A stretch of 64,000 nt of DNA from the IMG/VR virus record IMGVR_UViG_3300045125_000071, positions 124,001 to 188,000 of that record, one strand, 5' to 3'. Each line of letters begins with the position of its first letter. Position 1 is the first letter of the stretch. This document shows positions 13,693-48,133 of this stretch, piece by piece. The notes beneath the pieces are model-generated. The model was not told the DNA's origin. It was given only the letters and a program-made list of their open reading frames with translations, and searched no databases. The translations under genes and the position numbers were made by a program.

Positions 13693-14767
13693 ATGCTTTT
13701 TGATTTTGACGATATTTTAATTACACCTGCAATTACATCCCCAATTAACTCAAGAAAGGAAGTTAATCCTTTTTATGCTGATGGGTTTCTTCCATTAATG
13801 ACCGCCCCAATGGATACTGTTGTTGATGTTGAAAATATGAATATTTTCAAAGAAAATAAAGTACACGTTGTATTACCAAGAAATACCTATTGTGTTGATG
13901 ATGTCTTTTCATCATTTGGTTTGGACCAATTTATTGATTATTTTATCACAACAAAGAGGACATCGGATAAACCATTTAAAGTGTTAATTGATGTTGCAAA
14001 TGGTCATATGGAGAAATTAATCACTACCACAGAAATAGCGAAAAAATGTATGGCGACACCATGATATTGATGGTGGGTAATGTAGCAAACCCAAATACAT
14101 TCCAAAAATTTTGCGAAACAGATGTTGATTATGTTAGAATTGGTATTGGTAATGGTGGCGGGTGTTTAACGACTGTACAGACAGGTATTGGTTATCCTAT
14201 GGCTTCACTCATAACAGAATGTCATAAAAAAAGGTCTAATTTAAATGAATCAATAAATTTAAGTTTATTTTTTGACAAAAAATTAGAAAAAAAACGTATA
14301 AAAACCAAAATCGTTGCTGATGGCGGGTTTAAAAAATACTCAGATATTATTAAAGCATTAGCGTTGGGTGCCGATTATGTGATGTTGGGTTCAATATTCA
14401 ATAAAGCGTTGGAAAGTGCGGGTGAAACAATAAGACATACGCCTGAATTAACCGTAGGTCAAGTTGTTGACCAATATTCACAAGAGGCAAGAGATATGTT
14501 TGAAGCAGAAATCATTTTGAGAAAACTGTTCAGAGGTATGAGTACTAAAGAGGTACAGAAGAAGTGGGGTAAAGATGACCTGGTAACATCTGAAGGTATT
14601 GTTAAATCACACAAAGTAGAATATACATTATCAGGGTGGAGAAAGAATTTTGAGGATTATTTGCGTTCTGCCATGAGTTACACGGGAAAAAAGGACTCCA
14701 CGAATTTATTGGTGGAGTTCAATATGAAATGATTACACAAAATGCTTTTAAAAGGTTTGACAAGTGA
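13693..14767 (+). CDS. IMP dehydrogenase / GMP reductase family protein (frameshifted)
   Basis: FDFDDILI, TAPMDTV, IDVANGHM, catalytic loop RIGIGNGGGCLT, IVADGG, FRGMS. Confidence 0.85.
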
Positions 14768-17993: not shown

Positions 17994-19729
17994 ATGGATA
18001 TAAATTACTTAACAAACAAGCTATTAAAAGAAGCTGTAGAAAAAAATATCAAAAACAATTTGATAACTTATACGGAACTTGGAAAAACGAAAAACCAAAT
18101 CTTACATTAGAAGATGCTGAGGCAATATATAATGTTTATAGAAGTGTTTTAGGTTCTATTAATATGGATGTAGACGCTGTTAAAAGATTTTTATATATAC
18201 ATGATGGCAAAACACCTAATAAAAGAAAATTAGAATTAAAAGATTTACAAAATATTGAATCTATCACATTTGTTGAGTTGCTTTCATTTTAGAAATTGTG
18301 GAAAAAATTCGAGAAAGATATTGATTCCGATGATTCTGAAGCAAAAAAACAAGACGATTTACAAAAAGAAAATGAAATAAAGGCAATATTTGATGCTGAT
18401 GGTGTGCAACCAACAAAAGAAAAATTGATGAATCTAAGAAAATGTGGTATGATGCCACATCAGCAAAAATATCAGAAGGTTCAGTAAGGTTATATGAAAT
18501 TATGAACCAAACCCAAATCTATAAGAATGGGTTTATTACTATCAAAAAATGTACTTGCTAGGAAAAATACAATCGAGAAAGGAGGTTTTAATTACCCATG
18601 GTGCGTAACCATGAGAGGTCGTAATGTCTATATTAGACGTGTTGATGAAAATGGTAATGAATATGGTGATGGCGTTCAGAATCACATGGAAAACATGTAT
18701 TCCAGCTATAGAAGCGGTCAAGGTTGGACATTTTATTTTGTTATAGATGATAGTAAACCAGAAACCGACAAATATCATATGGCATCAATAGCAGTATCTA
18801 AAAATAAATTATTTTTGTTACATCAATGCTTAATGATGGTGATAGACAAATGGATTGGGATGACATATCAATAATTTATCCAGATTTAGATGATTTGGAA
18901 AATGTTTTAGTACCAAGAGAACATGATACTAAAGAATTAGAAACAAAAAGCATTCTTGATATTGTTAATGAAATACCAGGTAATCAAACGAATTTTCAAG
19001 ACAAGACAATCAAAGACAAATGGATTTTATTGATGCTGGTGGTGTTTTAAGAGTACCACGTTCTTGGGAAATGGCTAGTAAAGATGTAAGAGCAACATAT
19101 ATTAATACAACAATAGTACCAAACGTAAACTCAAAATTCAGTAATTTAGAATTTATTCAAGCGGTACTAAAAACAAGTAAAAACCATTTAGAAAAAAATT
19201 GATAAATTTAGGATTTAAAAATGGTGTAAATTACCTAATTGAATATTATTTAAATCGTTCTTATGAATCAAAAATTGCAAGTAAAACAAATAAAAATCAT
19301 AAATTAATGATAAATAGAGTCACCAAAAAAGTTGGTTTATTCGATTTTGGTAATTTTACTTGGTTAACATTTAACGGTATAACATTCGATGATAACTATT
19401 CTCTTATGAGCGGTAGGGGTGAATTTTATGTAAGCAATAAAAACATAAATTATATTTTAGAAAAATATACAAAAGGCGCTGAAGATTCAACAACGCTTTA
19501 TGCATTATTTGAATTCGGTGGACCATCTAAACTTACTGCCGATGCTTATTTTTTCACCAATACCCAGTGGAACAAATTATTAAAAGATAAGAAAATAACA
19601 CCAAAATCTGCTAAATCACCCATAGCTAAAATTAAAGATTTTGAACCAGAAAGGGACATTGATATAAAAGAATATCTTATGAATTTAAAAGGGGTTTATA
19701 ACCCCCTTTTTTATTTAAGCAATGAATAA
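17994..19729 (+). CDS. large hypothetical protein (several frameshifts)
   Basis: Track ORFs 18296-18487, 18527-18874, 18826-19050, 19020-19202 and 19199-19729 abut in shifting frames; TATTTAT upstream. Confidence 0.55.
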
Positions 19730-25371: not shown

Positions 25372-26279
25372 TCAATAATATCTATTATTAACTAAAAAAT
25401 AAATCAAGTTCTTCCATTCTTCTTTTTGTAAACCCCGCATGAATTTACCGTTATCATAAACATATTGCAACCAGTATGTTTTGATTGCTTTTGGGTCTTC
25501 ACTATTAATTGCGTTTTTCAATCCATCGCCAAGACTCCCAACATTGTATAGAAAAATTGCTAAAGCATCGAACTCATTTTGACTAAGAGGAACTGAAATA
25601 TCTTTTTTAATTTCTGGCAAAACTTTTTCATTCATATGGCTCATTAGATATTTTGCAGCCATTGCTTTAGATATGTGGAATTTGGTTCCTTTTTGATATT
25701 TCTTTAATTCTGGATGGTTTTTAACCAATGTACCATAGCCAATGGTCAATGCTCCGCCACACGGTTTTGATGTTGGTGCGTCAGGACAATGGTCATCATA
25801 AACCTGGCTTCTGAAATCTTCCGTTTTTTGTGATTGCAATATTTGAATCGCAAGTCTTGAATATGTTTTAGCTGCTGGTTTACCAACAGGTAACGCATAT
25901 ACATGAAATATTCTGTTTTTTCCAAACTTGCCAATTTTTATCAATTTTGCTTTCGGATTCTTTGTTTTTACCATATCACAAGAAGGACATTTTCCATTAT
26001 CAATCTCTTCAGAAAAAGGAATCAACAAAATGACAGGCTTTTCATTTTCAGCCGTCTCAAATTTCAAAATAGATTTTCCCATATCTGATAATGTTATTTG
26101 GATGGATTTTAAAACAATTTTTTTCCTTTTGTAAGTGTTTTCACTTTTTTATAAAAATTATTTAATGTCACATCCTGTATGGTATAATTTTGTGGTTTTA
26201 TAGATAATTCGTTTTCATTTATTAATGTTTTTATAACAATCGATAATTGAGATTCTGTCAGTTTAATAAAATTTGGCAT
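25372..26279 (-). CDS. GH24 phage lysozyme with N-terminal extension and shared leader (frameshifted)
   Basis: VYDD...LTIGYGT; LSQNEFDAL..FLYNVG; W..YVY.NGK..RGL; start MPNFIKLTESQL. Confidence 0.8.
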
Positions 26280-26327
26280 TATGTAACTATTTTCTGATAG
26301 ATAAATATTTATATAATAAAATAATCA

Positions 26328-27068
26328 TGAAGAATAACATTATATTAACGGAATCACAATTGAAAAGAATAATTGAGAAAGTAATTGCTGAGCAAGATAA
26401 ATCATACACTGTTGGCGATTTAAAAAATATGGGCTTGCTTGGTGGTAAACCACCAACACAACAATGGACACCGCCAGCACGTGGTGAAAAATATGGTGAA
26501 AGTAGAGGTCCTGGTAGAATTGCAAAAGAAGGAAATATAAGACCTTCCATAACATTGCCGAGTGGTTTATTCAAAAATGGAATTGATAGAATTGATACAA
26601 GTTCTGTTGAATTTAAAAATGGTATAAACGCAATTGCTGATGCGGTCAAAAAAAGGGACAAAATATAACGGTATTCGTTGAGGGTGGAGCATCGGCTGTC
26701 GGTCAAGTAGAAGGATATGATAATAATGCATTAGCAAGTAGAAGAGCGCGCAATTTTATTGCACAAGCACAAAAAATGTTCCCATCTATAAATTTCAAAA
26801 CATCAACAAAAGTGGGTGTATCGACACGAAAAAATTCACCAGAAGCGGAAAGTGAGCAATATGTTAAATTGATGTTTCCTGGCGAAATGTCACCAGAAAA
26901 AAATATCAAGCGGTTGATAATACACAACTGGTAATGAATTATCGTAAACCAAAGAAACCAGTAGAAACCAAAAAATAGATTATAAAACATATTATAAGGT
27001 ATGTTATTGGATACCAGAAGAGTATTATAGCCAAGTAATGTCTTTAATTCAAAAAGTTGGGGGTCTAG
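26328..27068 (+). CDS. putative virion protein with shared leader, OmpA-C-like (frameshifted, end approximate)
   Basis: MKNNIILTESQLKRIIEKVIAEQ; VEGGASAVG...NNALASRRARNF after the frameshift. Confidence 0.55.
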
Positions 27069-27086
27069 AAGTATAATAAAATAATC

Positions 27087-27161
27087 ATGAAGAATTACAT
27101 TATATTGACAGAATCTCAATTAATACAAGTTATAAAGACTATTATAGCTGAAGGCAAATAA
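27087..27161 (+). CDS. 24-aa peptide consisting only of the shared leader
   Basis: MKNYIILTESQLIQVIKTIIAEGK*; 5' region duplicates that of the 26328 gene. Confidence 0.5.
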   Translation: MKNYIILTESQLIQVIKTIIAEGK

Positions 27162-27193
27162 TTATTTCCATTCTCTTTTAATTAAATGGATAT

Positions 27194-27658
27194 ATGAGAA
27201 TAAAGAAGGGAAAACACGGGAACATTCATTTACCAAGAATCGTATCACCAAAGAAGGAATTGAAACGTCAAGCAACGTTCACCGATTCATGCAGATATGA
27301 TATTGGTGATGACCAAAGCGATATCAATAAGTTATATGGAATCGGGTTTTTACCATGGCACAGAAAGAATTCAATAAGATTTGGTTGGAGATATGTGAAG
27401 GAAACCGATAAGATTGAAATCCTGGCGTATTGGTATATAAACAGCACCAGATACAATGAAAGCATATGTTTTGTGGATATCAATCAGAAATGTGCATACA
27501 GCATCAAATGGATTGGCAATGGTTATGAATTGAAGGTGGATGACATATCAAAGACAATCAATATGGGTAGCCATAATTTTGGTTTATATGTTATATCCAT
27601 ACTTCGGCGGGAATATGAAAGCCCCACATGATATTGTTATTGAAATTTCATCCCACTA
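27194..27658 (+). CDS. hypothetical protein (frameshift near 3' end)
   Basis: ORF 27194-27631. Confidence 0.6.
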
Positions 27659-27853
27659 ATCCTTAAGTTTTATATTAGTTATGAATATTAAATAAAATAC
27701 CCCAAAAATTTTTTTCACTTTGGGCATTATTTTCTAAGTTTTCAGTTTTTTACCAAAAATTTTTTCACATTTACCAATAAAATCCAATTTCCCAGAAAAA
27801 ATTTGGAATATATAGTATATTTGTGTAAATTTCATTTATTAAAAAGTTTAAAC

Positions 27854-28406
27854 ATGGAAAAAACAAAAATCGTTAAAAATAACGAAATGACCGCAGAAAT
27901 TCTCAAGGAAATGTCAGAAGAAGGGTTTTGGATTTTATTCGAAAGACTTTCATTGAAAAACAATTATCCTGAAATATTTCAGCATATTAATTGTACAACC
28001 TGGTGAAGAATCTTTTCTTAGAGAAAGAATTGAAGATGAAATTGAATATTTACAAAATTACCTTAATGATAAAGAAAAAAATTGGAGTAAACACAAACGT
28101 ACTTACCAATTATTAGATAAAGAACATATGAGGTTTGACCAAAGTGGCTACGAGTCAGTAACGGGTGAGGTAACAATACACAATACGGGAATATTAAATA
28201 AATTCGCTGATTTGGGAATATATGATTATACAAGTTTCCTATTCTTGGATTTCTATAAAGGCAGTGGAACCATATATTTGAAATATTGGGACAATGACGA
28301 GTATCTTGAAGAAGATGATTTAGGTGGTCTTACTACATCTGAAATAATATATAGGATTTTTGAATTGACGATTTTTACAAATAAAGTAAAAGAAAGAAGA
28401 TGGTGA
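27854..28406 (+). CDS. hypothetical protein (frameshifted)
   Basis: Frame of ORF 28128-28406 is open upstream (NWSKHKRTYQLLDKEHMRFDQ) and joins MEKTKIVKNNE at 27854. Confidence 0.5.
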
Positions 28407-28507
28407 AATGACAAAAAATTTTTTTTCAATTTTACTATATTTTTCCAAAAAAAATTTTTGTTACGGGATTGACCCCTGTTTAGACCCCCTAAAAATGCCT
28501 ATATAGA

Positions 28508-28561
28508 GGGGGGATACCATGGGGGAGGGGGTAGGTAGGGTGCATATAGGTAGGTAGGGGG
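28508..28561 (+). other. G-run tract (G-quadruplex-like) at the array boundary
   Basis: Several G3-G6 runs and GGTAGG repeats, preceded by C-runs at 28472-28489. Confidence 0.6.
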
Positions 28562-28562
28562 T

Positions 28563-28577
28563 AAACTAGACAAAATC
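28563..28577. repeat. cassette palindrome 1 (right arm only)
   Basis: AAACTAGACAAAATC; left arm replaced by the G-tract. Confidence 0.85.
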
Positions 28578-28698
28578 CAGCCGCCCCCCGTACCTGCTGA
28601 ACTTCAGCATGGCTTTAACAAATGATTAACCTATTGTGTGTTCGTATATGGATATGTTTCGTATATTTGCTTATTCAATCACCTAAACCTTTTACGCC

Positions 28699-28989
28699 AT
28701 GCAAATCAAGACTTCTTACGCGCACCCAGTGAACTTCAGTGTTGATGTGAACATCGAAGACGGTTTCATCAGTTATAATGTTAAGGTATCCGAAACCGAG
28801 TTGGAGATTACCTACTCATATGCCGATACTCGCACGGGTGTAACCAAGGCGCAGATTAATGCGGGTGCAGACTTCATCCGCGAGAGCCTCAAAAATCGCA
28901 CCCTGCACCTGCCCACCTTCATTCCCATTGCAGACATCGCAGATGTTGACCAATGGGATGGTGTTGCGGAGCAAGTGTATCCCGAATAG
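28699..28989 (+). CDS. cassette 1 hypothetical protein (paralog of 31820)
   Basis: Lies between promoter and terminator; LHLPTFIP...QWDG shared with 31820. Confidence 0.85.
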   Translation: MQIKTSYAHPVNFSVDVNIEDGFISYNVKVSETELEITYSYADTRTGVTKAQINAGADFIRESLKNRTLHLPTFIPIADIADVDQWDGVAEQVYPE

Positions 28990-29068
28990 GCTCACCACAC
29001 ACATTCAATGCCCACCGATTGGTGGGCATTTTTTTTGCCCCAACCCGACGGGGACTCGACCGCCGTTA

Positions 29069-29113
29069 GATTTTCTCTAGTTTCAAAGTGCTATGATAAA
29101 ACTAGAGAAAATC
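29069..29113. repeat. cassette palindrome 2
   Basis: GATTTTCTCTAGTTT-N15-AAACTAGAGAAAATC (compensatory change in both arms). Confidence 0.95.
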
Positions 29114-29255
29114 TCGGAAGCCCCAGATTCCTCCTCGGTTGGTTTAACAATACATTAGCGATGTATTAACATGATATTAGCAAAAGGTGAGCGTATCTTT
29201 GTGGCTCACCTAAACCACCGCATGAGTCGAGCGGTTCACCAAACGACACCACACC

Positions 29256-29699
29256 ATGGCAAACCCAATGCCCGCTGCTTCTCTCCTGCACCTGATTTCC
29301 GAAGAAACCAAAGAACTGAAGGGCGCACCCTTCACCGTGCGTTCCAAGCGCACGGGCGTAGACTTCACCTACAAGGTGACCCAGTCCGTTTTCAAGGACG
29401 TGCGCTACTTTCACGTCAAGGTCGAGAAGATGCTTGATGGCATCCTCGGCTTTTACTACCTCGGCTACTTCCGTGCCGATGAGGGGAAGATTTTTGCCAA
29501 AGGTCGTGTGCCCGTGGAAACCCCTTCTGCCCTCGCCATTGGCTGGGTGCTGCGCAAGGCATTCGCAAAGGATGCTGCTGCGCTTGATGAGGGCGTGGAA
29601 GCGTTCAACCTCGGTTCGTGCTGCGTGTGTGGTAAGCGTCTGTCCGATGCTCGTAGCATCGAGTTGGGTATTGGTCCCGTCTGCCGTGGTGAGCGTTAA
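29256..29699 (+). CDS. DUF6011-like zinc-finger domain protein
   Basis: C-terminal CCVCGKRLSDARSIELGIGPVC. Confidence 0.7.
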   Translation: MANPMPAASLLHLISEETKELKGAPFTVRSKRTGVDFTYKVTQSVFKDVRYFHVKVEKMLDGILGFYYLGYFRADEGKIFAKGRVPVETPSALAIGWVLRKAFAKDAAALDEGVEAFNLGSCCVCGKRLSDARSIELGIGPVCRGER

Positions 29700-29935
29700 T
29701 CGCTTTCATCCCCGATATTGAAACCCCGTCCATGTGACGGGGTTTTTTGTTTCTATCCCTAAACGAATTTAAAGCCTTTTACGGGCGTTTCTTGTTCCAA
29801 TAGTATCCTACTATTGTTTTCTGATTATCGTCTATTGTAGGGGGTTCTAAAACGATTAAGCAAAACGGACAACCAAAACGTGGGAACAGACATTCTTGCT
29901 GTGAGGCTGAAGCGACGGGACGCTTCCCCAGTTCG

Positions 29936-29980
29936 GATTTTGTCTAGTTTTATGTTATTGTTGTGAAACTAGACAAAATC
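29936..29980. repeat. cassette palindrome 3
   Basis: Consensus arms, N15. Confidence 0.95.
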
Positions 29981-30123
29981 TTGCCGCCCGTACCTGCTGA
30001 GCGATGGGGTTTGTCTTTAACAATACATTAGCAATGTATTAACATTTTATTTGGAAATTGTGTGCGTATCTTTGTGGCTCACCTAAACCACCGCATGAGC
30101 CGAGCGGACAAACGGCACACACC

Positions 30124-30495
30124 ATGGGTCTTGATATGTACATTCAGCGCCGAGTTAATGGCGGTCAGTCCGAGCAGGTTGGCTACTTTCGGAAATTCTA
30201 CGCCCTCCATGATTGGATTGGCATTCATGTGGGTGAGGTTGAGAACCTTGCCCCCGTTGTCCTGTCCGAGGAAGTCCTTCAGAACTTGTCCATGACGTTG
30301 GAAAATGTCATGGATTGTCCCGAATTGGCTCGCCTGACCTTTCCACCCGAAAAGAACTACGGGGATATTGACCCGTGGTATTTCCATCGGGTCGGAACTG
30401 CCTTGGAGTTGGTGTGGAAACTCCGTATGGAGGCTTCCGTTGCCCTTCAAGAGCGTGGCGAAGTCCACGAACTTGAATATGTGGCGTGGTGGTGA
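30124..30495 (+). CDS. MGLDMY-family phage protein (paralog of 53013)
   Basis: MGLDMY...VGYFRKFYALHDWI...YVAWW. Confidence 0.8.
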   Translation: MGLDMYIQRRVNGGQSEQVGYFRKFYALHDWIGIHVGEVENLAPVVLSEEVLQNLSMTLENVMDCPELARLTFPPEKNYGDIDPWYFHRVGTALELVWKLRMEASVALQERGEVHELEYVAWW

Positions 30496-30717
30496 CCTTG
30501 CCCGTATCCCACAAAGCCCGTCCGATGTGACGGGCTTTTTTATTTTCATCCCTTACCCAATTTCAAGCCCATTACGGGCTTTTTTCATTACTGATGGTAT
30601 CTACATATCACCCGAAGATTATCGTTCAATTTTGGGCGTTATAATGCGTTTAAGCAAATGGTCATCCAAAACGTGGGAACAACGATTTCCCTGGCGACGG
30701 GACGCTTCCCCAGTTCG

Positions 30718-30765
30718 GATTTTGTCTAGTTTTAGATTTTAATAGTTTCAAAACTAAACAAAATC
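30718..30765. repeat. cassette palindrome 4
   Basis: N18, right arm AAACTAAACAAAATC. Confidence 0.95.
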
Positions 30766-30959
30766 TGCCCGTCCAAAGCCAGGTCGCAGACTGCCAAAAT
30801 CCTTTAACAATACATTAGCACATCATTAACATTATATTTGCATATTGCACCCTATCTTTGTTGCAGTTCTTTGATAGACGGACTATCTTACATAGCCTTG
30901 CAGGTGCAAGGTGGGTAGATGATATTTTAACTTTTTTTCACCTAAAAAAACCTAAACAC

Positions 30960-31556
30960 ATGGCACAGAAAGTTCAAATGAGCGTACTTGATTTCGTATT
31001 ATTTATGCTCCGTTTCACGCACCGCCACATGGCAGGATTGACCGCTGAAACCTGCCTTGATAATGCCCAAATGAAGGGTGGTAAAGCCACCGCTGCAAAG
31101 TATGGTGGTTATGTCACGAAGTTGTCACGGATAACGTGGAATCACTCCGTGGACTACGAAAACGCAGTCAAAAACAAACTTGTAAAGTTTGGTCTTGACC
31201 CCGAAGCGTTTATCGCAGGTGAGCATAGGTTTGCAAAACGTGCGCTTTGTGACGGAAAGTTGACCACTATGGCTTATCACAAAGATGATGAACATCTACC
31301 TATATCCGAGCGTAGGTGGTATCTTGTGGCTTACATCATGGACGGCATCGTAAAAAGCAAATATGCTTACACGGATGCCAACGGCAACGAAGTTGATGCT
31401 GATACGCTCCATGCCGACCTTTATGATAAGCGTTCACGCAAACAAGCGGATGCAGGTCTAACGGAAATTGAGCAGCAGGTAATCTATCGGAATTATTCGG
31501 TGGAAAATTTGCGGAACATTCGCTTTGAAGGCTACGATATTGACATCGTGCAGTAA
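30960..31556 (+). CDS. hypothetical phage protein
   Basis: Start MAQKVQMSV after a CCTAAACAC leader; terminator follows. Confidence 0.8.
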   Translation: MAQKVQMSVLDFVLFMLRFTHRHMAGLTAETCLDNAQMKGGKATAAKYGGYVTKLSRITWNHSVDYENAVKNKLVKFGLDPEAFIAGEHRFAKRALCDGKLTTMAYHKDDEHLPISERRWYLVAYIMDGIVKSKYAYTDANGNEVDADTLHADLYDKRSRKQADAGLTEIEQQVIYRNYSVENLRNIRFEGYDIDIVQ

Positions 31557-39213: not shown

Positions 39214-39681
39214 ATGAATTTGAATGTCGCACAAAAGTTGGCAAACGACCTATTGATTGAACATGGTCTTGTTCAGAAAGGTTGGTACTTTCAATTTGAT
39301 AATAGCAAAAGGCGTTTCGGTGTTTGCAAATATGGTAAAAAGGTTATTGGTCTTTCACGGGAATTGACGTTGCTCAACGACGTTGTAAATGTTAAAGATA
39401 CTATCCTGCACGAAATAGCCCACGCCATTGCAGGACGAGGTGCTGGACATGGTTGGTTGTGGAAACAAGTTTGCATCCGCATCGGGGCAAAGCCTGAAAG
39501 GTGTTATTCAAGCAATGAGGTCAATACGCCACTACTGAAATATCAAGCAACGTGTGGTGCTTGTGGTGCGCTGCATCAGAAAGCAAAAATGCACAAAAAG
39601 GGTGTGAGAAGGTCTTGCAAATGTCAAAGCGGAAAAGATTGGGATAGTAGGGTATTACTTGAATATAAGGCATATTATTGA
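39214..39681 (+). CDS. SprT-like zinc metalloprotease
   Basis: RRFGVC...IGLS...DTILHEIAHA...GHG..WK.V...IG. Confidence 0.85.
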   Translation: MNLNVAQKLANDLLIEHGLVQKGWYFQFDNSKRRFGVCKYGKKVIGLSRELTLLNDVVNVKDTILHEIAHAIAGRGAGHGWLWKQVCIRIGAKPERCYSSNEVNTPLLKYQATCGACGALHQKAKMHKKGVRRSCKCQSGKDWDSRVLLEYKAYY

Positions 39682-43409: not shown

Positions 43410-43910
43410 ATGAAACAAATCGAACTGACCGAAAACGTTATGGTATCCGACCCTTGCTATGAGAAGGGTACATGGTGTCAAGAAGAAATTGTGGTAAAAC
43501 CAGGGGTGTATTGTGTTATGACCCAAAAGAAAGATGGAAGGGTTGACAAATTGCTCGCCATGCACATTGACCACACGGATGCGAAATTGAAAAAGAAGCC
43601 ATATTGCACCATTGGTGTTGATAGCGGACAAGCAGGGATTTTCTCTCTTGATACGTTCCGAAACGACAAGGTGTTTGAGGGGGAAGAAAGTGATTTTGCA
43701 AAAAGAATGGGGTTGGATGAAGGTGATGGTGAAAAGTGGTATTCCCATATTTGTGACCTAACATTGGGTGAAGATAGTTGGGGAACATACGCCAATGGTG
43801 TGGCATCGTCAAGCGGTTGGGGTGATGGTAGTTATGATGTATTCGTTGCCGAAGCCAAGTCGGGCGAAATCGTCGGCATCTTGATTGATTTTGAAGTCGG
43901 TGACTATTAA
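43410..43910 (+). CDS. DUF4241-like protein
   Basis: V.DPCY; IGVDSGQAGIF; SSGWGDGSY.V. Confidence 0.6.
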   Translation: MKQIELTENVMVSDPCYEKGTWCQEEIVVKPGVYCVMTQKKDGRVDKLLAMHIDHTDAKLKKKPYCTIGVDSGQAGIFSLDTFRNDKVFEGEESDFAKRMGLDEGDGEKWYSHICDLTLGEDSWGTYANGVASSSGWGDGSYDVFVAEAKSGEIVGILIDFEVGDY

Positions 43911-44956: not shown

Positions 44957-45082
44957 CCGAATCGCCCAGCCAGGTGGTGCTGGTAAAATGTTAATGGTTT
45001 CATAAAAAGAAAATAAGACTGAAAATAAATTTGGTGCATATGAAATTTCAGACTAAATTTGCATCATAAAACTTTTATCACC

Positions 45083-45919
45083 ATGAGTAACAAACTCGCA
45101 ACCACGCCCCTGAACTGGGGTGTCCGCACGGAGAGCCTGACAACGGAGTCGGGCATCGTTCTGAACGACTATGTGTCCCTTGTACGGGATGACACGAACG
45201 TTCCCTTGTCGGTGGTGTCCAGCACCTATCATCCGTTTCAGAACGAGCAGTTAATCGAATTGCTTGAGAAGGTGTCCAAACAAACGGGTGTGGGCATCCA
45301 CAAGAGCGGATATTTCGGGGATGGACAGAAGGTGTATATCCAATTAAAAACGGATGACCTTGCCATGCCCAACGACAGGGTGGAAGGCTTCGTGACGGGT
45401 ATCAACTCTTTCGATGGAAGCACATCCCTTGCTTTCGGGAATAGCACCATCACGATTTCTTGTCAGAACACCTTCTTTGCTGCCATGCGGGAACTGAAGT
45501 CCAAAATTCGTCATACAAAAAATATGATGATAAAGGTGGATGAAGTTGCAGCATCCCTTGACAAGGCACTTATCGAAGAGAAGAAGATGTTCGAGCGTAT
45601 CAAACGCATGAGCGAAGTCCGCATGACCCCGCAGGTGAAAGACCTTGTAATGAGGGCTCTTTTCGACCTTGACAGCACCCTTGACCTGTCGAAGGAGGAT
45701 GCCGTTTCCACGGTGACGCGGAACAAGATTATCAAGTACGAAATTGACCACCAAACGGAAGTCACGCAGAAGGGTGACAACCTGTGGGGTCTCTTTTCGG
45801 GTGTGACCCGTTACACCACCCACACCGCCACCAAGAATGACACGGAGTCCAAACTCTTCGGGGTCTATGCGGGAAGGGAACGCAAGATTTTCAATGAACT
45901 GGCAGCGTTCGCCAACTGA
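45083..45919 (+). CDS. DUF932/DUF945 family protein (phage/plasmid TIGR03299-like)
   Basis: L.VVS..Y..FQN; G.F..G.KVYIQL; NSFDGS.S.....T....CQNT; RHT; NLWGLF.GVT.Y..H. Confidence 0.85.
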   Translation: MSNKLATTPLNWGVRTESLTTESGIVLNDYVSLVRDDTNVPLSVVSSTYHPFQNEQLIELLEKVSKQTGVGIHKSGYFGDGQKVYIQLKTDDLAMPNDRVEGFVTGINSFDGSTSLAFGNSTITISCQNTFFAAMRELKSKIRHTKNMMIKVDEVAASLDKALIEEKKMFERIKRMSEVRMTPQVKDLVMRALFDLDSTLDLSKEDAVSTVTRNKIIKYEIDHQTEVTQKGDNLWGLFSGVTRYTTHTATKNDTESKLFGVYAGRERKIFNELAAFAN

Positions 45920-46032: not shown

Positions 46033-46705
46033 ATGAATAAGAATGAATATAGCGTTCGAGCCAACAAGGTTGAACAAGAAATGAACAGGATTGCAGAATT
46101 GATGAACACGCCGAGAATTGAATTAAACGAATCCAGCCTATCCCGTGTGTGGAGGCATACAGAGGAGTATGACATCGCCACAATATCGGCGTTCAGGAAC
46201 ATGAATGTAAATTGTCTGAATTACAGCGAGAATGTCGAGGAAGGACATGAATTCACATACAAAGAGAACAAAAGAGAGGAACAGGGATTTATTGTCTGTA
46301 TTGTTGCAGAAGGGTTATGGGGTGACGAAAATCATGGGCAATTATATCGAGAACTTCAATACCGAAAGTGCGGTTGAAGTCGGTGAAGAATCTTTCTTTG
46401 TTGTGAACAAAAATTCGGATGAAGATTTCTTCCCCACGCTGATAAAACTGGCGAAGTATTTTTGTCAAGACAGCGTATTACTTAAACCAAAGGGCGAGGA
46501 TGCTTATTTGTATGGAACAAACAATTCCGAATTCCCAGGTCTGGGTAATACAATCAATTTGGGTTCGTTCAAAGGTGGTGAAGAAGCGGAATTCCATTCC
46601 CGTGTTGGCAAATCAAAAAGACCATTTTTCTTTGCGGAAGATTTCAATGTCGCAAGTCGCCATCTGATTTCAACAAAAGCAAAAAAGGTTCTATCGCAAA
46701 TCTGA
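46033..46705 (+). CDS. hypothetical protein with T4-like leader (frameshifted)
   Basis: LNESSLSRVWRH...ATISAFR...N..RN..L...L...GYG.TK..G.YIE...EES.FV; two track ORFs join. Confidence 0.7.
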
Positions 46706-46790: not shown

Positions 46791-46838
46791 GATTTTGTCT
46801 AGTTTTGAAACTATTAAAATCTAAAACTAGACAAAATC
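46791..46838. repeat. cassette palindrome 19
   Basis: Consensus arms, N18. Confidence 0.95.
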
Positions 46839-46938: not shown

Positions 46939-47196
46939 ATGGAAAAGAAAACCAAGCACACCCTTTTGAAGGGAGAAGGCATCAACCAACACACCTTGTA
47001 TGGTGATTTCAAGGTTGAAGAGAAGGAATCGTTCAGCCGTCTGGTCGTAACCAAAAACAGCGTTCTGCGACATGAAACACCCACAGGCGAGTTCGCTGAA
47101 CACAAGCCCCTTTCGGTGGACAAAGGAAAGTGGAGCATGGGAAGGCAGGTCGAGTACAATCCCTTTGAAAACAGAATTAGTGCAGTATTTGATTAA
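46939..47196 (+). CDS. hypothetical protein of the type found beside DUF6745 genes
   Basis: L..GE...H.L...L.HE...EH..L....G.W..GRQ.EY.P......V.D. Confidence 0.7.
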   Translation: MEKKTKHTLLKGEGINQHTLYGDFKVEEKESFSRLVVTKNSVLRHETPTGEFAEHKPLSVDKGKWSMGRQVEYNPFENRISAVFD

Positions 47197-48133
47197 TGTC
47201 AAATTTTGCGTAACATTCATACCTACCATTAAATTCTTTTTTTGGTAGGTATGAATTATTCTTATTGTTGTTTTTTATCGTTACTTCAATTTCACTAATA
47301 TATTTAGCATCGCCATTAATAATTTTTAATATTTCAAAATTGTACGGCATTTTATTTTTCCCCCTAAATCTCTGTGAAATTGAATTGAAAGTTTTACCTA
47401 CTTTGAAAAATCTCTCATCATTATCCCAACATTCTAATATGTATAATTTGAATGAATCAAATTTATTTGATTTTAGACCTTTCTGTTCCCATAATCGGTA
47501 ACTCCAAACACCATAATTCATACCACATTTTTTACAACCTTTTCCATTCAAATGATTATTAGGTCGTTGGTTAAATTCCCCATGAACAGAACAAATTATT
47601 TTAACATCAGTTTTTGTATTTACATATTTTGATAATGAATAATCGTAGGTATTACCATGAACACTAATTGCTTTATCTACAAAATCTTGTGTTGTCAATT
47701 TCCCTGTTTTTCCACATTTTGGGCAACCATATCCATTTAGATGGTCGTTAGGTCGTTGGTTAAATTCCCCATGAATATGACATAATATTGTGACTTTTGT
47801 TGTTGAATTAATTATAACACATTTTGAGTAATCATATTTATCACCATGAACTTTTTTAGCTTTTTCAATAAAAATATCAGAGTATTTCGGTTTGATAGAT
47901 TTTTTTACTATTTCTTTCTTAATTTTCTCTTTTACCTTTCTTTTACTTTTATTGTATTGTTTCAATTTTTCTTTTCTTTCTGGTGATAGATTTTTATAAT
48001 AATTTTTATCATATTCCAATCTCTGTTTTTTTATTTTCTCTATATTGTTTTTCTTGTACTCCCTGGCTCTTGCCTTATATCTTTCTCTTTGTTCTTCCGT
48101 TAAGTCTAACCATTTCATATTGCTATTTATCAA
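47177..48133 (-). mobile_element. free-standing homing endonuclease (DUF723 repeats + GIY-YIG-like C-terminus)
   Basis: Two F..KA..VHG..YDYS...C..HG.F.QRPN.HL.G.GC..C repeats; LYIL...FFKVGKT; AT-rich and antisense to the array. Confidence 0.8.

What the first reader, a model, noticed from the sequence alone, without database searches (positions are those of the whole stretch)
28410..28580. Array boundary: A/T tracts, C-runs, a G-run tract and a half palindrome
Seen: AnTn tracts (also at ~27700-27805), C-runs, then ~55 bp of G3-G6 runs abutting a lone right arm at 28563. Base composition and promoter type switch here. Inference: candidate genome terminus or packaging site, placing the cassette array among the first-injected DNA, or a G-quadruplex at the first cassette. 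The half site may be a recombination or cleavage scar.
Basis: partly seen in the sequence, partly recalled or inferred. Interest (0 to 1): 0.6.

Follow-up and report, generated by a model that had tools for sequence, protein, structure and literature searches.

The report
Conserved head of phage cassette array
The A/T tracts, C-runs, G-runs and single repeat arm are one copy of a non-coding element conserved once per genome at the start of the early-gene block in a large family of uncultivated T4-like jumbo phages, not a genome end, a scar or an assembly error; its function is still unproven.

Summary
Window 28413-28577 holds two AnTn tracts, C-runs, a 54-nt G-run tract and a lone right arm of the inter-cassette palindrome. 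The G-run tract contains the only canonical G4 motif in the 251-kb genome. GC content jumps from 0.30 to 0.50 here.

The genome is T4-like (gp23 capsid, gp20 portal). About 45 distinct related IMG/VR contigs carry the same element:
- It occurs once per genome and lies inside the contig, including in a circularly closing 310-kb assembly.
- It sits 53-73 kb from the terminase gene.
- In most relatives it lies where leftward genes and the rightward early genes diverge.

The lone arm abutting the G-runs recurs in two other array-bearing lineages, so it is an integral part of the element, not a scar. No RNA fold is conserved. Only half of the relatives keep a four-tract G4.

G0's cassettes nearest the head are the GC-richest and have no homologues in any relative. 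The array itself resembles PeSL cassettes of T4-type phages.

A near-identical element lies upstream of a DNA-invertase gene in about ten Flavobacteriia assemblies.

The terminus/pac reading is not supported. The most likely function is inferred only: a unique cis-acting site of the T4 origin type that also anchors cassette turnover.

The parts
27700..27806 (+). First copy of the left half of the head element. It holds AnTn boxes at 27704-27715, 27755-27765 and 27796-27804.
   Evidence: Aligns to the left half of the relatives' element far above shuffled controls, with scores of 34-46 against about 18 +/- 3. Sequence.
27816..28406 (+). TAnnTTTG box (27816-27823) and a low-GC gene (ATG at 27854, stop at 28406). 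The gene has an apparent +1 frame break near 27985-28006. It sits between the two left-half copies.
   Evidence: Three-frame translation. Promoter box. No Pfam or PHROG match. No relative found.
28413..28459 (+). Second copy of the left half: A6T8 (28413-28426) and A8T5 (28447-28459). These are homologous to the TTCYGGAAAA-type boxes of relatives.
   Evidence: In relatives this box occurs nowhere else in genomes of 287-324 kb.
28460..28489 (+). Box GTTACGGGATTGACCCC followed by a second C-run. The relatives' consensus is GGnATTG(A/T)CCCCCC.
   Evidence: Nearly invariant columns in alignment A1. This part was not imposed by the search pattern.
28500..28517 (+). Core box TATATAGAGGGGGGATAC. Relatives have TATATAAGGGGGGATAC followed by GGnAGGGGGG.
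   Evidence: One copy in each record checked that holds it.
28508..28561 (+). G-run tract, with a canonical four-tract G4 motif at 28508-28540.
   Evidence: The only such motif in the genome. In relatives, 19 of the 40 aligned sequences (39 relatives plus G0) have one on this strand, against 1 per 396 kb of flanking DNA.
28563..28577 (+). Lone right arm of the inter-cassette palindrome, directly abutting the last G-run.
   Evidence: The same arrangement is seen in G014 (arm at +67) and G015 (arm at +49). G001 has a degenerate copy.
28584..28602 (+). C6 run plus a GTACCTGCTGA flank. A near-copy stands behind the arm at 29966, and it is matched by the C-run/CCTGA segment of relatives.
28610..28669 (+). 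Promoter region of the first cassette: TTTAACA..TTAAC upstream motif and TATATTTG box at 28662-28669.
   Evidence: Repeat families D5, D7 and D14..
28699..29113 (+). First cassette: 96-aa ORF (28699-28989), hairpin plus T-run terminator (29007-29037) and first complete palindrome (29069-29113).
   Evidence: GC 0.49. No homologue in any fetched relative.

Best explanation
Shown (about 0.85 sure): the stretch is this genome's copy of a conserved, single-copy, non-coding 'head element' of roughly 170-250 bp. It marks the start of the rightward early-gene cassette block in a large family of T4-like jumbo phages, probably of Bacteroidota.

Its parts, in order:
- two or three AnTn boxes of the TTCYGGAAAA type;
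- the box GGnATTG(A/T)CCCCCC;
- a variable 20 nt;
- the invariant core TATATAAGGGGGGATAC-GGnAGGGGGG;
- a variable tail of G- and C-runs;
- in the lineages with palindrome arrays, one single arm of that palindrome;
- then the first early promoter.

It is conserved as primary sequence, not as a folded RNA.

Inferred (about 0.35): it most likely works as a unique cis-acting initiation site of the kind T4 has at oriE, oriF and oriG. Those origins also lie where transcription diverges and base composition shifts. They combine repeats or an early/middle promoter with an unwinding region. Here the iteron-like boxes and A/T tracts would be the entry and unwinding part. Early transcription into the G-rich non-template strand would favour a persistent RNA-DNA hybrid.

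Independently of that function, the fixed single arm serves as the anchor of the array. Homologous, PeSL-like exchange between a cassette's palindrome and this arm would add or remove cassettes next to the head. That would explain why the head-proximal cassettes are the GC-richest and are unique to this phage.
For: Identity of the phage and its relatives:
- T4-like capsid, portal and terminase.
- Relatives share 66-86% capsid identity.
- Three contigs carry both the capsid gene and the element: G001, G003 and G005.

Conservation:
- About 45 distinct homologues were found.
- Alignment A1 shows conserved boxes beyond those used as search patterns.

Single copy and internal position. The AnTn box is found only inside the element in four large genomes.

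Divergent setting: in at least 30 of 45 loci the left genes are on the minus strand and the right genes on the plus strand.

T4 precedent: T4's active origins lie at such divergence and composition-shift points, oriE has iterons and an early promoter, and oriF and oriG work through R-loops (PMC3016281). G-rich non-template strands stabilise R-loop primers (PMC3488243).

No conserved RNA fold: the consensus energy is -0.75 kcal/mol with no covariation. C-run to G-run swaps are tolerated without compensation.

Lone arm conserved: G014 and G015 show the same arrangement, and G001 has a degenerate copy.

Head-proximal novelty:
- G0 ORFs in 28.7-35 kb have GC 0.41-0.57 (apart from one 78-aa ORF at 0.35).
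- They have no homologue in any relative, apart from one weak match of the 30960-31556 ORF to one locus (35% identity).
- From 35.1 kb onward many ORFs have homologues.
- The distal array is syntenic with G001.
- G014 shows the same GC jump, 0.29 to 0.41, at its element.

PeSL precedent: PeSLs combine an early promoter, an AT-rich stretch and a polyG/polyC stem-loop. A crossover inside the loop and mini-circles have been reported (PMC2839356).
Against: - No promoter that would fire into the G-runs could be recognised. There is no TTTG/TAnnTTTG pair and no sigma-70 pair with sensible spacing.
- In T4 oriF and oriG the downstream unwinding element is A+T-rich, not G-rich.
- Cumulative GC skew has only a local minimum here, and it is confounded by gene orientation.
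- Only 19 of the 40 aligned elements (G0 among them) keep a four-tract G4.
- The bacterial homologue lies about 190 nt upstream of a DNA-invertase gene in the same orientation. That looks more like a promoter/leader or a res-type site.
- No reads were available to test replication, ends or transcription.
- Cassette gain at the head is inferred from composition and gene distribution only.
Confidence: 0.4

Rival explanations
1. Transcriptional control region. The boxes would be operators for a host or phage factor. The core would be an unusual promoter or leader for the first early transcript. The G-run/C-run tail would be a PeSL-like stem-loop that insulates the early block from leftward or incoming transcription.
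For: - Orientation relative to the downstream genes is kept in most phages.
- The same orientation holds in the bacterial copies, where the element lies about 190 nt upstream of an invertase gene.
- Many relatives have polyG followed by polyC hairpins in the tail, as PeSL stem-loops do.
- The first early promoter follows within about 100-200 nt.
Against: - No recognisable Bacteroidota or sigma-70 promoter is present in the conserved part.
- The boxes occur at this one locus only, which is unusual for a regulator's motif.
- No conserved hairpin or covariation is seen.
- In four of the loci carrying the adjacent 180-206-aa gene (L142, L197, L205, L239) that gene is inverted, yet the element is unchanged.
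Confidence: 0.25
2. Packaging initiation site or physical genome terminus. Terminase would cut here, so the cassette array would enter the cell first.
For: - It is a unique site flanked by A-tracts, as in some pac and cos regions.
- Three contigs end inside the G-tract (two at +27, one at +66) and three start 28-48 nt before the core.
- A chromosomal island carrying the same non-coding element could be a satellite that mimics a helper's packaging signal.
Against: - The capsid, portal and terminase genes are of T4 type, and T4 itself packages by the headful without fixed ends (established knowledge of the family).
- The element is internal, at arbitrary positions, in G000, G001 and G007-G013, including a contig with overlapping ends.
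- It lies 53-73 kb from the terminase gene.
- The contig breaks are not at one nucleotide. They overlap by about one k-mer across the most conserved core, as expected where co-occurring strains share that core.
Confidence: 0.1
3. Integron-like acquisition site. The head with its half site would act like attI, a site-specific recombinase supplied in trans (for example a host invertase) would insert circular cassettes there, and the palindromes would play the part of attC.
For: - A single non-palindromic site stands at the head of an array of palindromes, and this is conserved in three lineages.
- The newest-looking cassettes lie next to the head.
- The element is linked to a serine invertase gene in Flavobacteriia.
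Against: - No tyrosine or serine recombinase is found in G0 or in two 100%-complete relatives.
- Every cassette has its own promoter and terminator.
- Most relatives have the element without any palindromes.
- One relative (L132, in G016) has unrelated palindromes and no half site.
Confidence: 0.1
4. A DNA or RNA G-quadruplex as such is the functional unit, acting on the first cassette.
For: - It is the only canonical G4 motif in 251 kb.
- In relatives such motifs are about 200-fold enriched in the element over flanking DNA.
Against: - 21 of the 40 aligned sequences lack a four-tract motif, yet all keep the exact core sequence.
- Upstream G:C tracts can switch strand.
- The ordinary (hairpin-type) fold of the stretch is no more stable than that of shuffled sequence, z = +0.5 and +0.8. 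This program does not model quadruplexes.
Confidence: 0.07
5. Assembly artefact: a chimeric join of two genomes of different GC content, or a low-quality G-rich patch.
For: - There is a sharp GC jump.
- The record has many frameshifts.
- Contigs of relatives often break here.
Against: - Independent assemblies show the same order: low-GC left side, element, then a higher-GC array (G014, G001).
- The distal array is syntenic with G001.
- The element is conserved box by box in about 45 contigs.
Confidence: 0.02

Closest known systems
PeSL (promoter-early stem-loop) cassettes of the hyperplastic regions of T4-type phages (Arbiol et al. 2010, PMC2839356; Comeau et al. 2014, PMC4122927)
   Same: - The phages are T4-type.
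- The blocks consist of small orphan early genes, each with a host-type promoter, an A/T-rich upstream part and a G/C stem-loop terminator.
- The repeated intergenic units can recombine. A crossover in the loop was reported for RB49, which would leave half sites.
   Different: - The promoters here are of the Bacteroidota -33/-7 type.
- The repeat includes an extra A/T-rich 15-16-nt-arm palindrome between terminator and promoter.
- The array is one 30-kb unidirectional block with a strong GC offset.
- It starts at a conserved single-copy head element with one arm. No such leader has been described for PeSLs. Recombination was not tested here.
Bacteriophage T4 replication origins oriE, oriF and oriG (Kreuzer and Brister 2010, PMC3016281)
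   Same: - They lie at points where transcription diverges and composition shifts.
- oriE has a cluster of short repeats and depends on an early promoter.
- oriF and oriG use a transcript that stays hybridised.
   Different: - T4 origins share no sequence motif with this element.
- Their unwinding element is A+T-rich, not G-rich.
- T4 has several origins, whereas this element is single-copy.
- No replication data exist for these phages.
Integron attI site plus attC cassette array
   Same: A simple site stands at the head of an array of imperfect palindromes that separate single-gene cassettes, and the apparently newest cassettes lie next to the head.
   Different: No integrase is present. Cassettes carry their own promoters and terminators. 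The arms have no GTTRRRY-type core. Most relatives have the head without palindromes.
G-rich R-loop primer sites: mitochondrial CSB II (PMC3488243, PMC4176368) and ColE1 RNA II (the latter from my own knowledge)
   Same: G clusters on the non-template strand directly downstream of a possible start, next to A/T-rich DNA.
   Different: No promoter or polymerase partner has been identified. No T7-like polymerase gene was detected in the phages, but the control search also found nothing, so that result says little. Only half of the relatives keep four G-tracts.
res site upstream of a resolvase/invertase gene (Tn3/gamma-delta type; from my own knowledge)
   Same: The bacterial copies lie directly upstream of a 201-aa serine recombinase gene. 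The element holds two or three dyad-like boxes spaced about 34 and 51-54 bp apart.
   Different: The boxes do not resemble known resolvase half sites. The phages encode no serine recombinase. No flanking inverted repeats define an invertible segment.

Membership tests
PeSL-type cassette region of T4-type phages | Host genome is a T4-type phage | tested here: met
   Gp23 capsid E 2e-75, Portal_T4 E 1e-74, and a terminase match.
PeSL-type cassette region of T4-type phages | Repeated intergenic unit holding a host-type early promoter with an A/T-rich upstream part | tested here: met
   TTTG-N17-21-TAnnTTTG sites are concentrated in the array (17 on the plus strand of the window), some preceded by AnTn tracts. 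This rests on sequence motifs only.
PeSL-type cassette region of T4-type phages | G/C stem-loop acting as a terminator in the same unit | tested here: met
   Repeat families D4 and D11 are GC hairpins followed by T-runs after the cassette ORFs. Activity was not assayed.
PeSL-type cassette region of T4-type phages | Recombination between units creates indels and mini-circles | not testable with these tools
   Only indirect signs are available: 90%-identical 92-nt promoter segments in neighbouring cassettes, 98%-matching palindromes 16 kb apart, and lineage-specific cassettes next to the head.
Physical terminus / pac or cos site | Molecule ends (read starts or contig ends) at one fixed position | tested here: inconclusive
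   No usable reads. The element is internal in G000, G001, G007-G012, G014, G015 and G016 and 387 nt from one end of G013. Six contigs break within about 115 nt of it, but not at one nucleotide.
Physical terminus / pac or cos site | Site in or next to the terminase genes | tested here: not met
   Terminase_6N matches lie 53-73 kb from the element in G000, G001, G008 and G010.
Integron | Integrase gene adjacent to the attI-like site | tested here: not met
   No Phage_integrase or Resolvase match in G0. No Resolvase match in G001, G008, G010, G014 or G015.
Integron | Promoterless cassettes expressed from a common promoter | tested here: not met
   Each cassette has its own promoter box and terminator.
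T4-type R-loop origin | Promoter followed by an A+T-rich unwinding element | tested here: inconclusive
   A/T tracts lie upstream of the G-runs, not downstream. No promoter was recognised.
T4-type R-loop origin | Location at a point of transcriptional divergence and composition shift | tested here: met
   Left genes on the minus strand and right genes on the plus strand in at least 30 of 45 loci. GC jump in G0 and G014. In G0 itself three plus-strand genes intervene.
Canonical intramolecular G-quadruplex | Four runs of at least three G with loops of 1-7 nt | tested here: met
   28508-28540, unique in the genome. Kept in only 19 of the 40 aligned elements. Folding was not assayed.
Structured non-coding RNA (any Rfam family) | Match to a covariance model, or conserved base pairs with covariation | tested here: not met
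   No Rfam match of note in 26000-31000. RNAalifold on 40 sequences gives 3 invariant pairs, no covariation and -0.75 kcal/mol.

The most novel reading that the evidence does not exclude
The head element is the fixed entry point of a recombinase-free (or host-invertase-assisted) gene-capture platform in T4-like phages of Bacteroidota. New anti-defence or host-takeover cassettes from GC-richer mobile elements would be inserted next to a conserved leader through its single repeat arm. The array would then read as a dated record, newest and GC-richest at the head and older, ameliorated and shared cassettes further away. The same leader would be portable to chromosomal islands of the hosts.
Probability: 0.15. 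Interest if true: 0.8.

Novelty: new variant of a known kind. Interest (0 to 1): 0.62.

Why it matters
A single-copy non-coding element is kept almost letter for letter across phages whose capsid proteins have diverged by up to a third. It is also shared with host chromosomal islands. It must therefore be read by some machinery, whether for replication, transcription, packaging or recombination.

It gives a handle on an uncultivated but widespread group of freshwater and marine jumbo phages:
- It marks the start of their early region.
- It explains why assemblies of these phages break there.
- It offers a testable candidate for an origin.

The array behind it extends the PeSL idea of cassette shuffling to Bacteroidota-type phages. 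It adds a leader and a polarity, with the newest cassettes at the head. That makes the open question of how T4-like phages acquire accessory and anti-defence genes directly testable.

Tried and rejected
1. Alternative genetic code for the low-GC part: ORF coverage does not single out any recoding. The short ORFs come from frameshifts.

2. Close relatives among deposited phages: no DNA match, near or distant. The best isolates by capsid protein are at 29-45% identity.

3. Read mapping of ends: only one freshwater run was found. It has five small contigs, none on the boundary. The stretch sent was 5,501 letters.

4. Relatives of the left-flank genes: none were found for 27978-28406. The hits for 27194-27631 (49% identity) are not syntenic.

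5. Exact palindrome pattern: absent from IMG/VR. In JGI metagenomes it gave only isolated, unrelated palindromes. The related arms in G014 and G015 differ by 1-2 letters and were found later through the head element.

6. Hairpin or cruciform of C-runs with G-runs: no more stable than shuffled sequence, and not supported by covariation.

7. Rfam: nothing.

8. DnaA boxes as a sign of an origin: TGTGGATAA follows the element in several relatives, but it recurs before many early promoters, so it is a promoter-associated motif.

9. Late-promoter reading of TATATAA: it is not found upstream of the capsid genes of relatives and is not enriched in G0.

10. T7-like polymerase promoter reading: no RNA_pol match in five genomes, but the control set cannot ring, so the evidence is weak.

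11. Global GC-skew extremum at the element: only a local one.

12. Invertible segment around the bacterial copy: no convincing flanking inverted repeats.

13. Function of the conserved 180-206-aa protein next to the element:
- no Pfam, PHROG or PDB sequence match;
- a confident model, pLDDT 96;
- no significant Foldseek match to solved structures (best E 0.06);
- only Sm/Hfq- and WYL-like small-barrel similarity at Z about 7, within the noise range;
- four uncharacterised viral proteins in BFVD.

Full report
**Observation**

- AnTn tracts: A6T8 at 28413-28426 and A8T5 at 28447-28459.
- C-runs: 28473-28476 and 28485-28489.
- G-run tract: 54 nt at 28508-28561.
- Right arm of the inter-cassette palindrome: 28563-28577, immediately after the last G-run, with no left arm before it.

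A genome-wide scan found 22 complete palindromes, all between window 29069 and 56986. This one lone arm stands at their head.

GC content rises from 0.30 to 0.50 within about 1 kb.

Long AnTn tracts are no more frequent in the genome than a third-order Markov model predicts. Even so, 4 of the 17 lie within 750 bp here. The four-tract G4 motif at 28508-28540 is the only one on either strand of the 251,358-bp record.

The stretch does not fold better than shuffled sequence as DNA or RNA, and it matches no Rfam family.

**What the genome is**

The window is bases 124001-188000 of a single 251-kb viral contig. It encodes a Gp23-type major capsid protein, a T4-type portal, a terminase, a DnaB-like helicase and an intein-bearing ribonucleotide reductase.

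The nearest isolates by capsid protein are distant T4-like phages at 29-45% identity. They include Flavobacterium phage vB_FspM_immuto.

IMG/VR holds hundreds of relatives with 66-86% capsid identity, several on contigs of 200-330 kb.

The cassette promoters have the Bacteroidota form TTTG-N17-21-TAnnTTTG, so the host is probably a member of that phylum.

The record has many frame breaks. Of the 141 proteins of relative G001 that have G0 matches, 38 are hit by two or more neighbouring G0 ORFs. Exact homopolymer lengths in the finding should therefore not be trusted.

**The array behind the boundary**

From 28.6 to about 59 kb all genes run rightward. Each small ORF has its own promoter and its own GC hairpin plus T-run terminator. 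A palindrome with 15-16-nt A/T-rich arms and a 10-19-nt loop stands between terminator and next promoter.

Recognisable products are a SAM lyase, DUF932, a SprT-like protein, DUF4241 and DUF6011. These are typical early accessory genes.

This layout matches the published description of PeSL cassettes in the hyperplastic regions of T4-type phages. PeSLs combine an early host-type promoter, an A/T-rich upstream part and a polyG/polyC stem-loop terminator. They recombine with each other, sometimes within the loop, and give mini-circles (PMC2839356; PMC4122927).

**The boundary is a conserved element**

Relative G001 (287 kb, 78% capsid identity) is syntenic with G0 on both sides of the boundary. 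At the corresponding place it has the same series of features: AnTn tracts, the GTTACGG-ATTG-C-run box, a second C-run, TATTTAA and about 90 nt of G-runs.

Two pattern scans of IMG/VR recovered about 45 distinct homologues. A 40-sequence alignment (A1) shows the following order:
- two or three boxes of the type TTCYGGAAAA-TTT;
- GGnATTG(A/T)CCCCCC;
- about 20 variable bases;
- the core TATATAAGGGGGGATAC followed by GGnAGGGGGG;
- a variable tail rich in G- and C-runs;
- the first early promoter.

The boxes outside the search patterns are conserved as well.

Each record checked that holds the element has exactly one copy. These are G001, G003 and G005-G016. Among them are four records that are 93-100% complete, one of which has overlapping ends. 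G002 and G004, both incomplete, have none.

The AnTn box occurs nowhere else in four genomes of 287-324 kb.

In at least 30 of 45 loci the genes on the left run leftward and those on the right run rightward.

In G0 the left half of the element is present twice, at 27700-27806 and 28413-28459. The two copies flank a low-GC gene that seems to have been inserted.

**The lone arm**

Two other lineages have palindrome arrays with nearly the same arm.

| Lineage | Left arm / right arm |
|---|---|
| G0 | ATTTTGTCTAG / CTAGACAAAAT |
| G014 | ATTTTGTCTGG / CCAGACAAAAT |
| G015 | ATTTAGTCTGG / CCAGACTAAAT |

In both of the other lineages the arms, allowing one mismatch, lie to the right of the element. 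The only exception in each is one isolated left-arm-like match 4.9 kb (G014) or 10.4 kb (G015) to its left. In both, the first arm is a lone right arm directly behind the last G-run. G014 also shows a GC jump from 0.29 to 0.41.

G001 has no palindromes, yet it keeps a degenerate copy of the arm at that place.

The contig of L132 (G016) has unrelated palindromes between its cassettes and no half site.

The half site is thus a regular part of the head in this sub-lineage, not an accident of G0.

The flank behind the arm (C-run, GTACCTGCTGA) resembles the tail of relatives that lack arms. It is copied behind the arm at 29966.

**Terminus or packaging site**

Reads could not decide. The only public run holds five small contigs that lie on cassettes.

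The comparative evidence is against a terminus.
- The element lies at arbitrary internal positions in all large contigs.
- It is 53-73 kb from the terminase gene.
- T4 itself packages by the headful without fixed ends (established knowledge of the family).

Three contigs end in the G-tract and three begin 28-48 nt before the core.
- The break points differ.
- They bracket the most conserved roughly 55 nt.
- That is what de Bruijn graphs give where co-occurring strains share a k-mer.

I rate this reading at about 0.1.

**RNA, G4 or duplex DNA**

RNAalifold finds no conserved structure. In two sequences the C-run is replaced by a G-run without compensation.

Four-tract G4 motifs are about 200-fold enriched in the element, but they are present in only 19 of the 40 aligned sequences.

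What is invariant is the letter sequence. This points to recognition of duplex DNA, or of a short single strand, by a protein.

**Polarity of the array**

G0 ORFs between 28.7 and 35 kb have GC 0.41-0.57, apart from one 78-aa ORF at 0.35. They have no homologue in any fetched relative, apart from one weak match of the 30960-31556 ORF to a single locus (35% identity). From 35.1 kb onward many ORFs have homologues in 1-17 loci. GC declines toward the phage's own level.

This fits gain of foreign cassettes next to the head. Homologous exchange between a circular cassette's palindrome and the head's single arm would produce exactly this architecture. No integrase or resolvase is encoded.

**Copies in bacteria**

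A scan of species-representative genomes found an identical 145-nt version of the element in about ten assemblies. Nine are labelled Flavobacteriia or Bacteroidota (Polaribacter, Flavobacterium, Arcticimaribacter and a Bacteroidetes single-cell genome among them). One is labelled Rhodobacteraceae.

In a Polaribacter chromosome it lies about 190 nt upstream of a 201-aa DNA invertase/resolvase gene, in the same orientation.

Flanks diverge to 83% identity while the element stays identical. The island shares no protein with the phages.

This supports a Bacteroidota host. It also shows that the element is a portable cis module.

**Function**

Function is not shown. A unique, sequence-conserved site with repeated boxes and A/T tracts, placed where transcription diverges and composition shifts, is what T4 shows at oriE, oriF and oriG (PMC3016281). 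G clusters on the non-template strand stabilise priming RNA-DNA hybrids elsewhere (PMC3488243).

I therefore put an origin-type site first (about 0.35). The other readings follow:
- an early-transcription control region (0.25);
- an attI-like site (0.1);
- a packaging site (0.1);
- a G4 acting as such (0.07).

Points against the origin reading are the lack of a recognisable promoter, the G-rich rather than A+T-rich downstream part, and the promoter-like position of the bacterial copy.

**A possible partner**

A family of 180-206-aa proteins lies next to the element in 14 loci, in either orientation. G0's weak homologue is 30858-31556.

- The family has 102 representatives in the large protein library.
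- A model of it is confident, with pLDDT 96.
- The model resembles only Sm/Hfq- and WYL-type small barrels at Z about 7, which is within the noise range.
- It has no family or PDB sequence match.

It is a candidate binder to test, nothing more.

**Limits**

No experiment or read data bear on function. Alignment invariants in the core are partly imposed by the search pattern. Locus ends from pattern scans are not always contig ends, so only ends confirmed by coordinates were counted as such.

Noticed in passing
whole genome G000; e.g. window 27854-28406, 13693-14732, 18826-19729: Many core genes are split into two or three neighbouring ORFs in different frames. 38 of the 141 G001 proteins that have G0 matches are hit this way. 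The record probably carries indel errors, or the phage carries many broken genes.
   Followed up: partly
L261:3780-4060 (Polaribacter chromosome) and L250, L253, L254, L257, L260, L275, L287, L292, L307: An identical 145-nt homologue of the head element lies about 190 nt upstream of a 201-aa DNA invertase/resolvase gene in about ten bacterial assemblies. Nine are labelled Flavobacteriia or Bacteroidota and one Rhodobacteraceae. Flanks diverge to 83% while the element stays identical. This may be a satellite or island that borrows a phage cis site.
   Followed up: partly
L221:5936-6556 (-), L142:812-1357 (-); weak G0 homologue at window 30858-31556: A conserved protein of 180-206 aa and unknown function lies next to the element in 14 loci, in either orientation. 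The AlphaFold model is confident (pLDDT 96). It shows only weak Sm/Hfq- and WYL-like small-barrel similarity, at Z about 7.
   Followed up: yes
L192, L175, L210 and other relatives, downstream of the element: The perfect DnaA-box sequence TGTGGATAA(C) recurs every 0.5-2 kb on one strand, just upstream of early promoters. G0 has a TTAACA-type motif at the same place. Early promoters of these phages may bind host DnaA or a phage factor.
   Followed up: partly
L132 (G016), 680-2760 nt right of its element: A relative has an analogous array but with an unrelated palindrome (TAGTGGGGCAA, 24-nt loop, TTGCCCCACTA) between terminator and promoter. Inter-cassette palindromes therefore arose or were replaced independently.
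   Followed up: partly
L241 (G014), 331-522 nt right of its element: Five tandem 48-nt repeats, each carrying a right arm, follow the first palindrome of that relative's array.
   Followed up: no
window 47177-48133 (-), repeats at 47523-47620 and 47712-47809: A low-GC (0.31) minus-strand ORF with treble-clef zinc-finger repeats (DUF4379) interrupts the plus-strand, higher-GC array. It looks like a separately inserted mobile gene.
   Followed up: no
window 39214-39681, 43410-43910, 45059-45919, 46232-46705, 29256-29699: Cassette products include SprT-like, DUF4241, DUF932, SAM-lyase and DUF6011 proteins. These gene types are also common in the leading regions of conjugative elements and in anti-restriction sets.
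   Followed up: no
L001:14384-17656 (-): The ribonucleotide reductase gene carries an intein with a LAGLIDADG domain.
   Followed up: no
window 28725-28957, 30331-30539, 31159-31323: A freshwater metagenome run holds short contigs identical to two head-proximal cassettes, and a 93% variant of the first cassette. The cassettes, or the phage itself, therefore occur in that sample at low depth.
   Followed up: no
window 29143-29234 and 30016-30107; 30718-30765 and 46791-46838: Neighbouring cassettes share 90%-identical promoter segments. Two palindromes 16 kb apart are 98% complementary. Both are signs of recent exchange or duplication inside the array.
   Followed up: no
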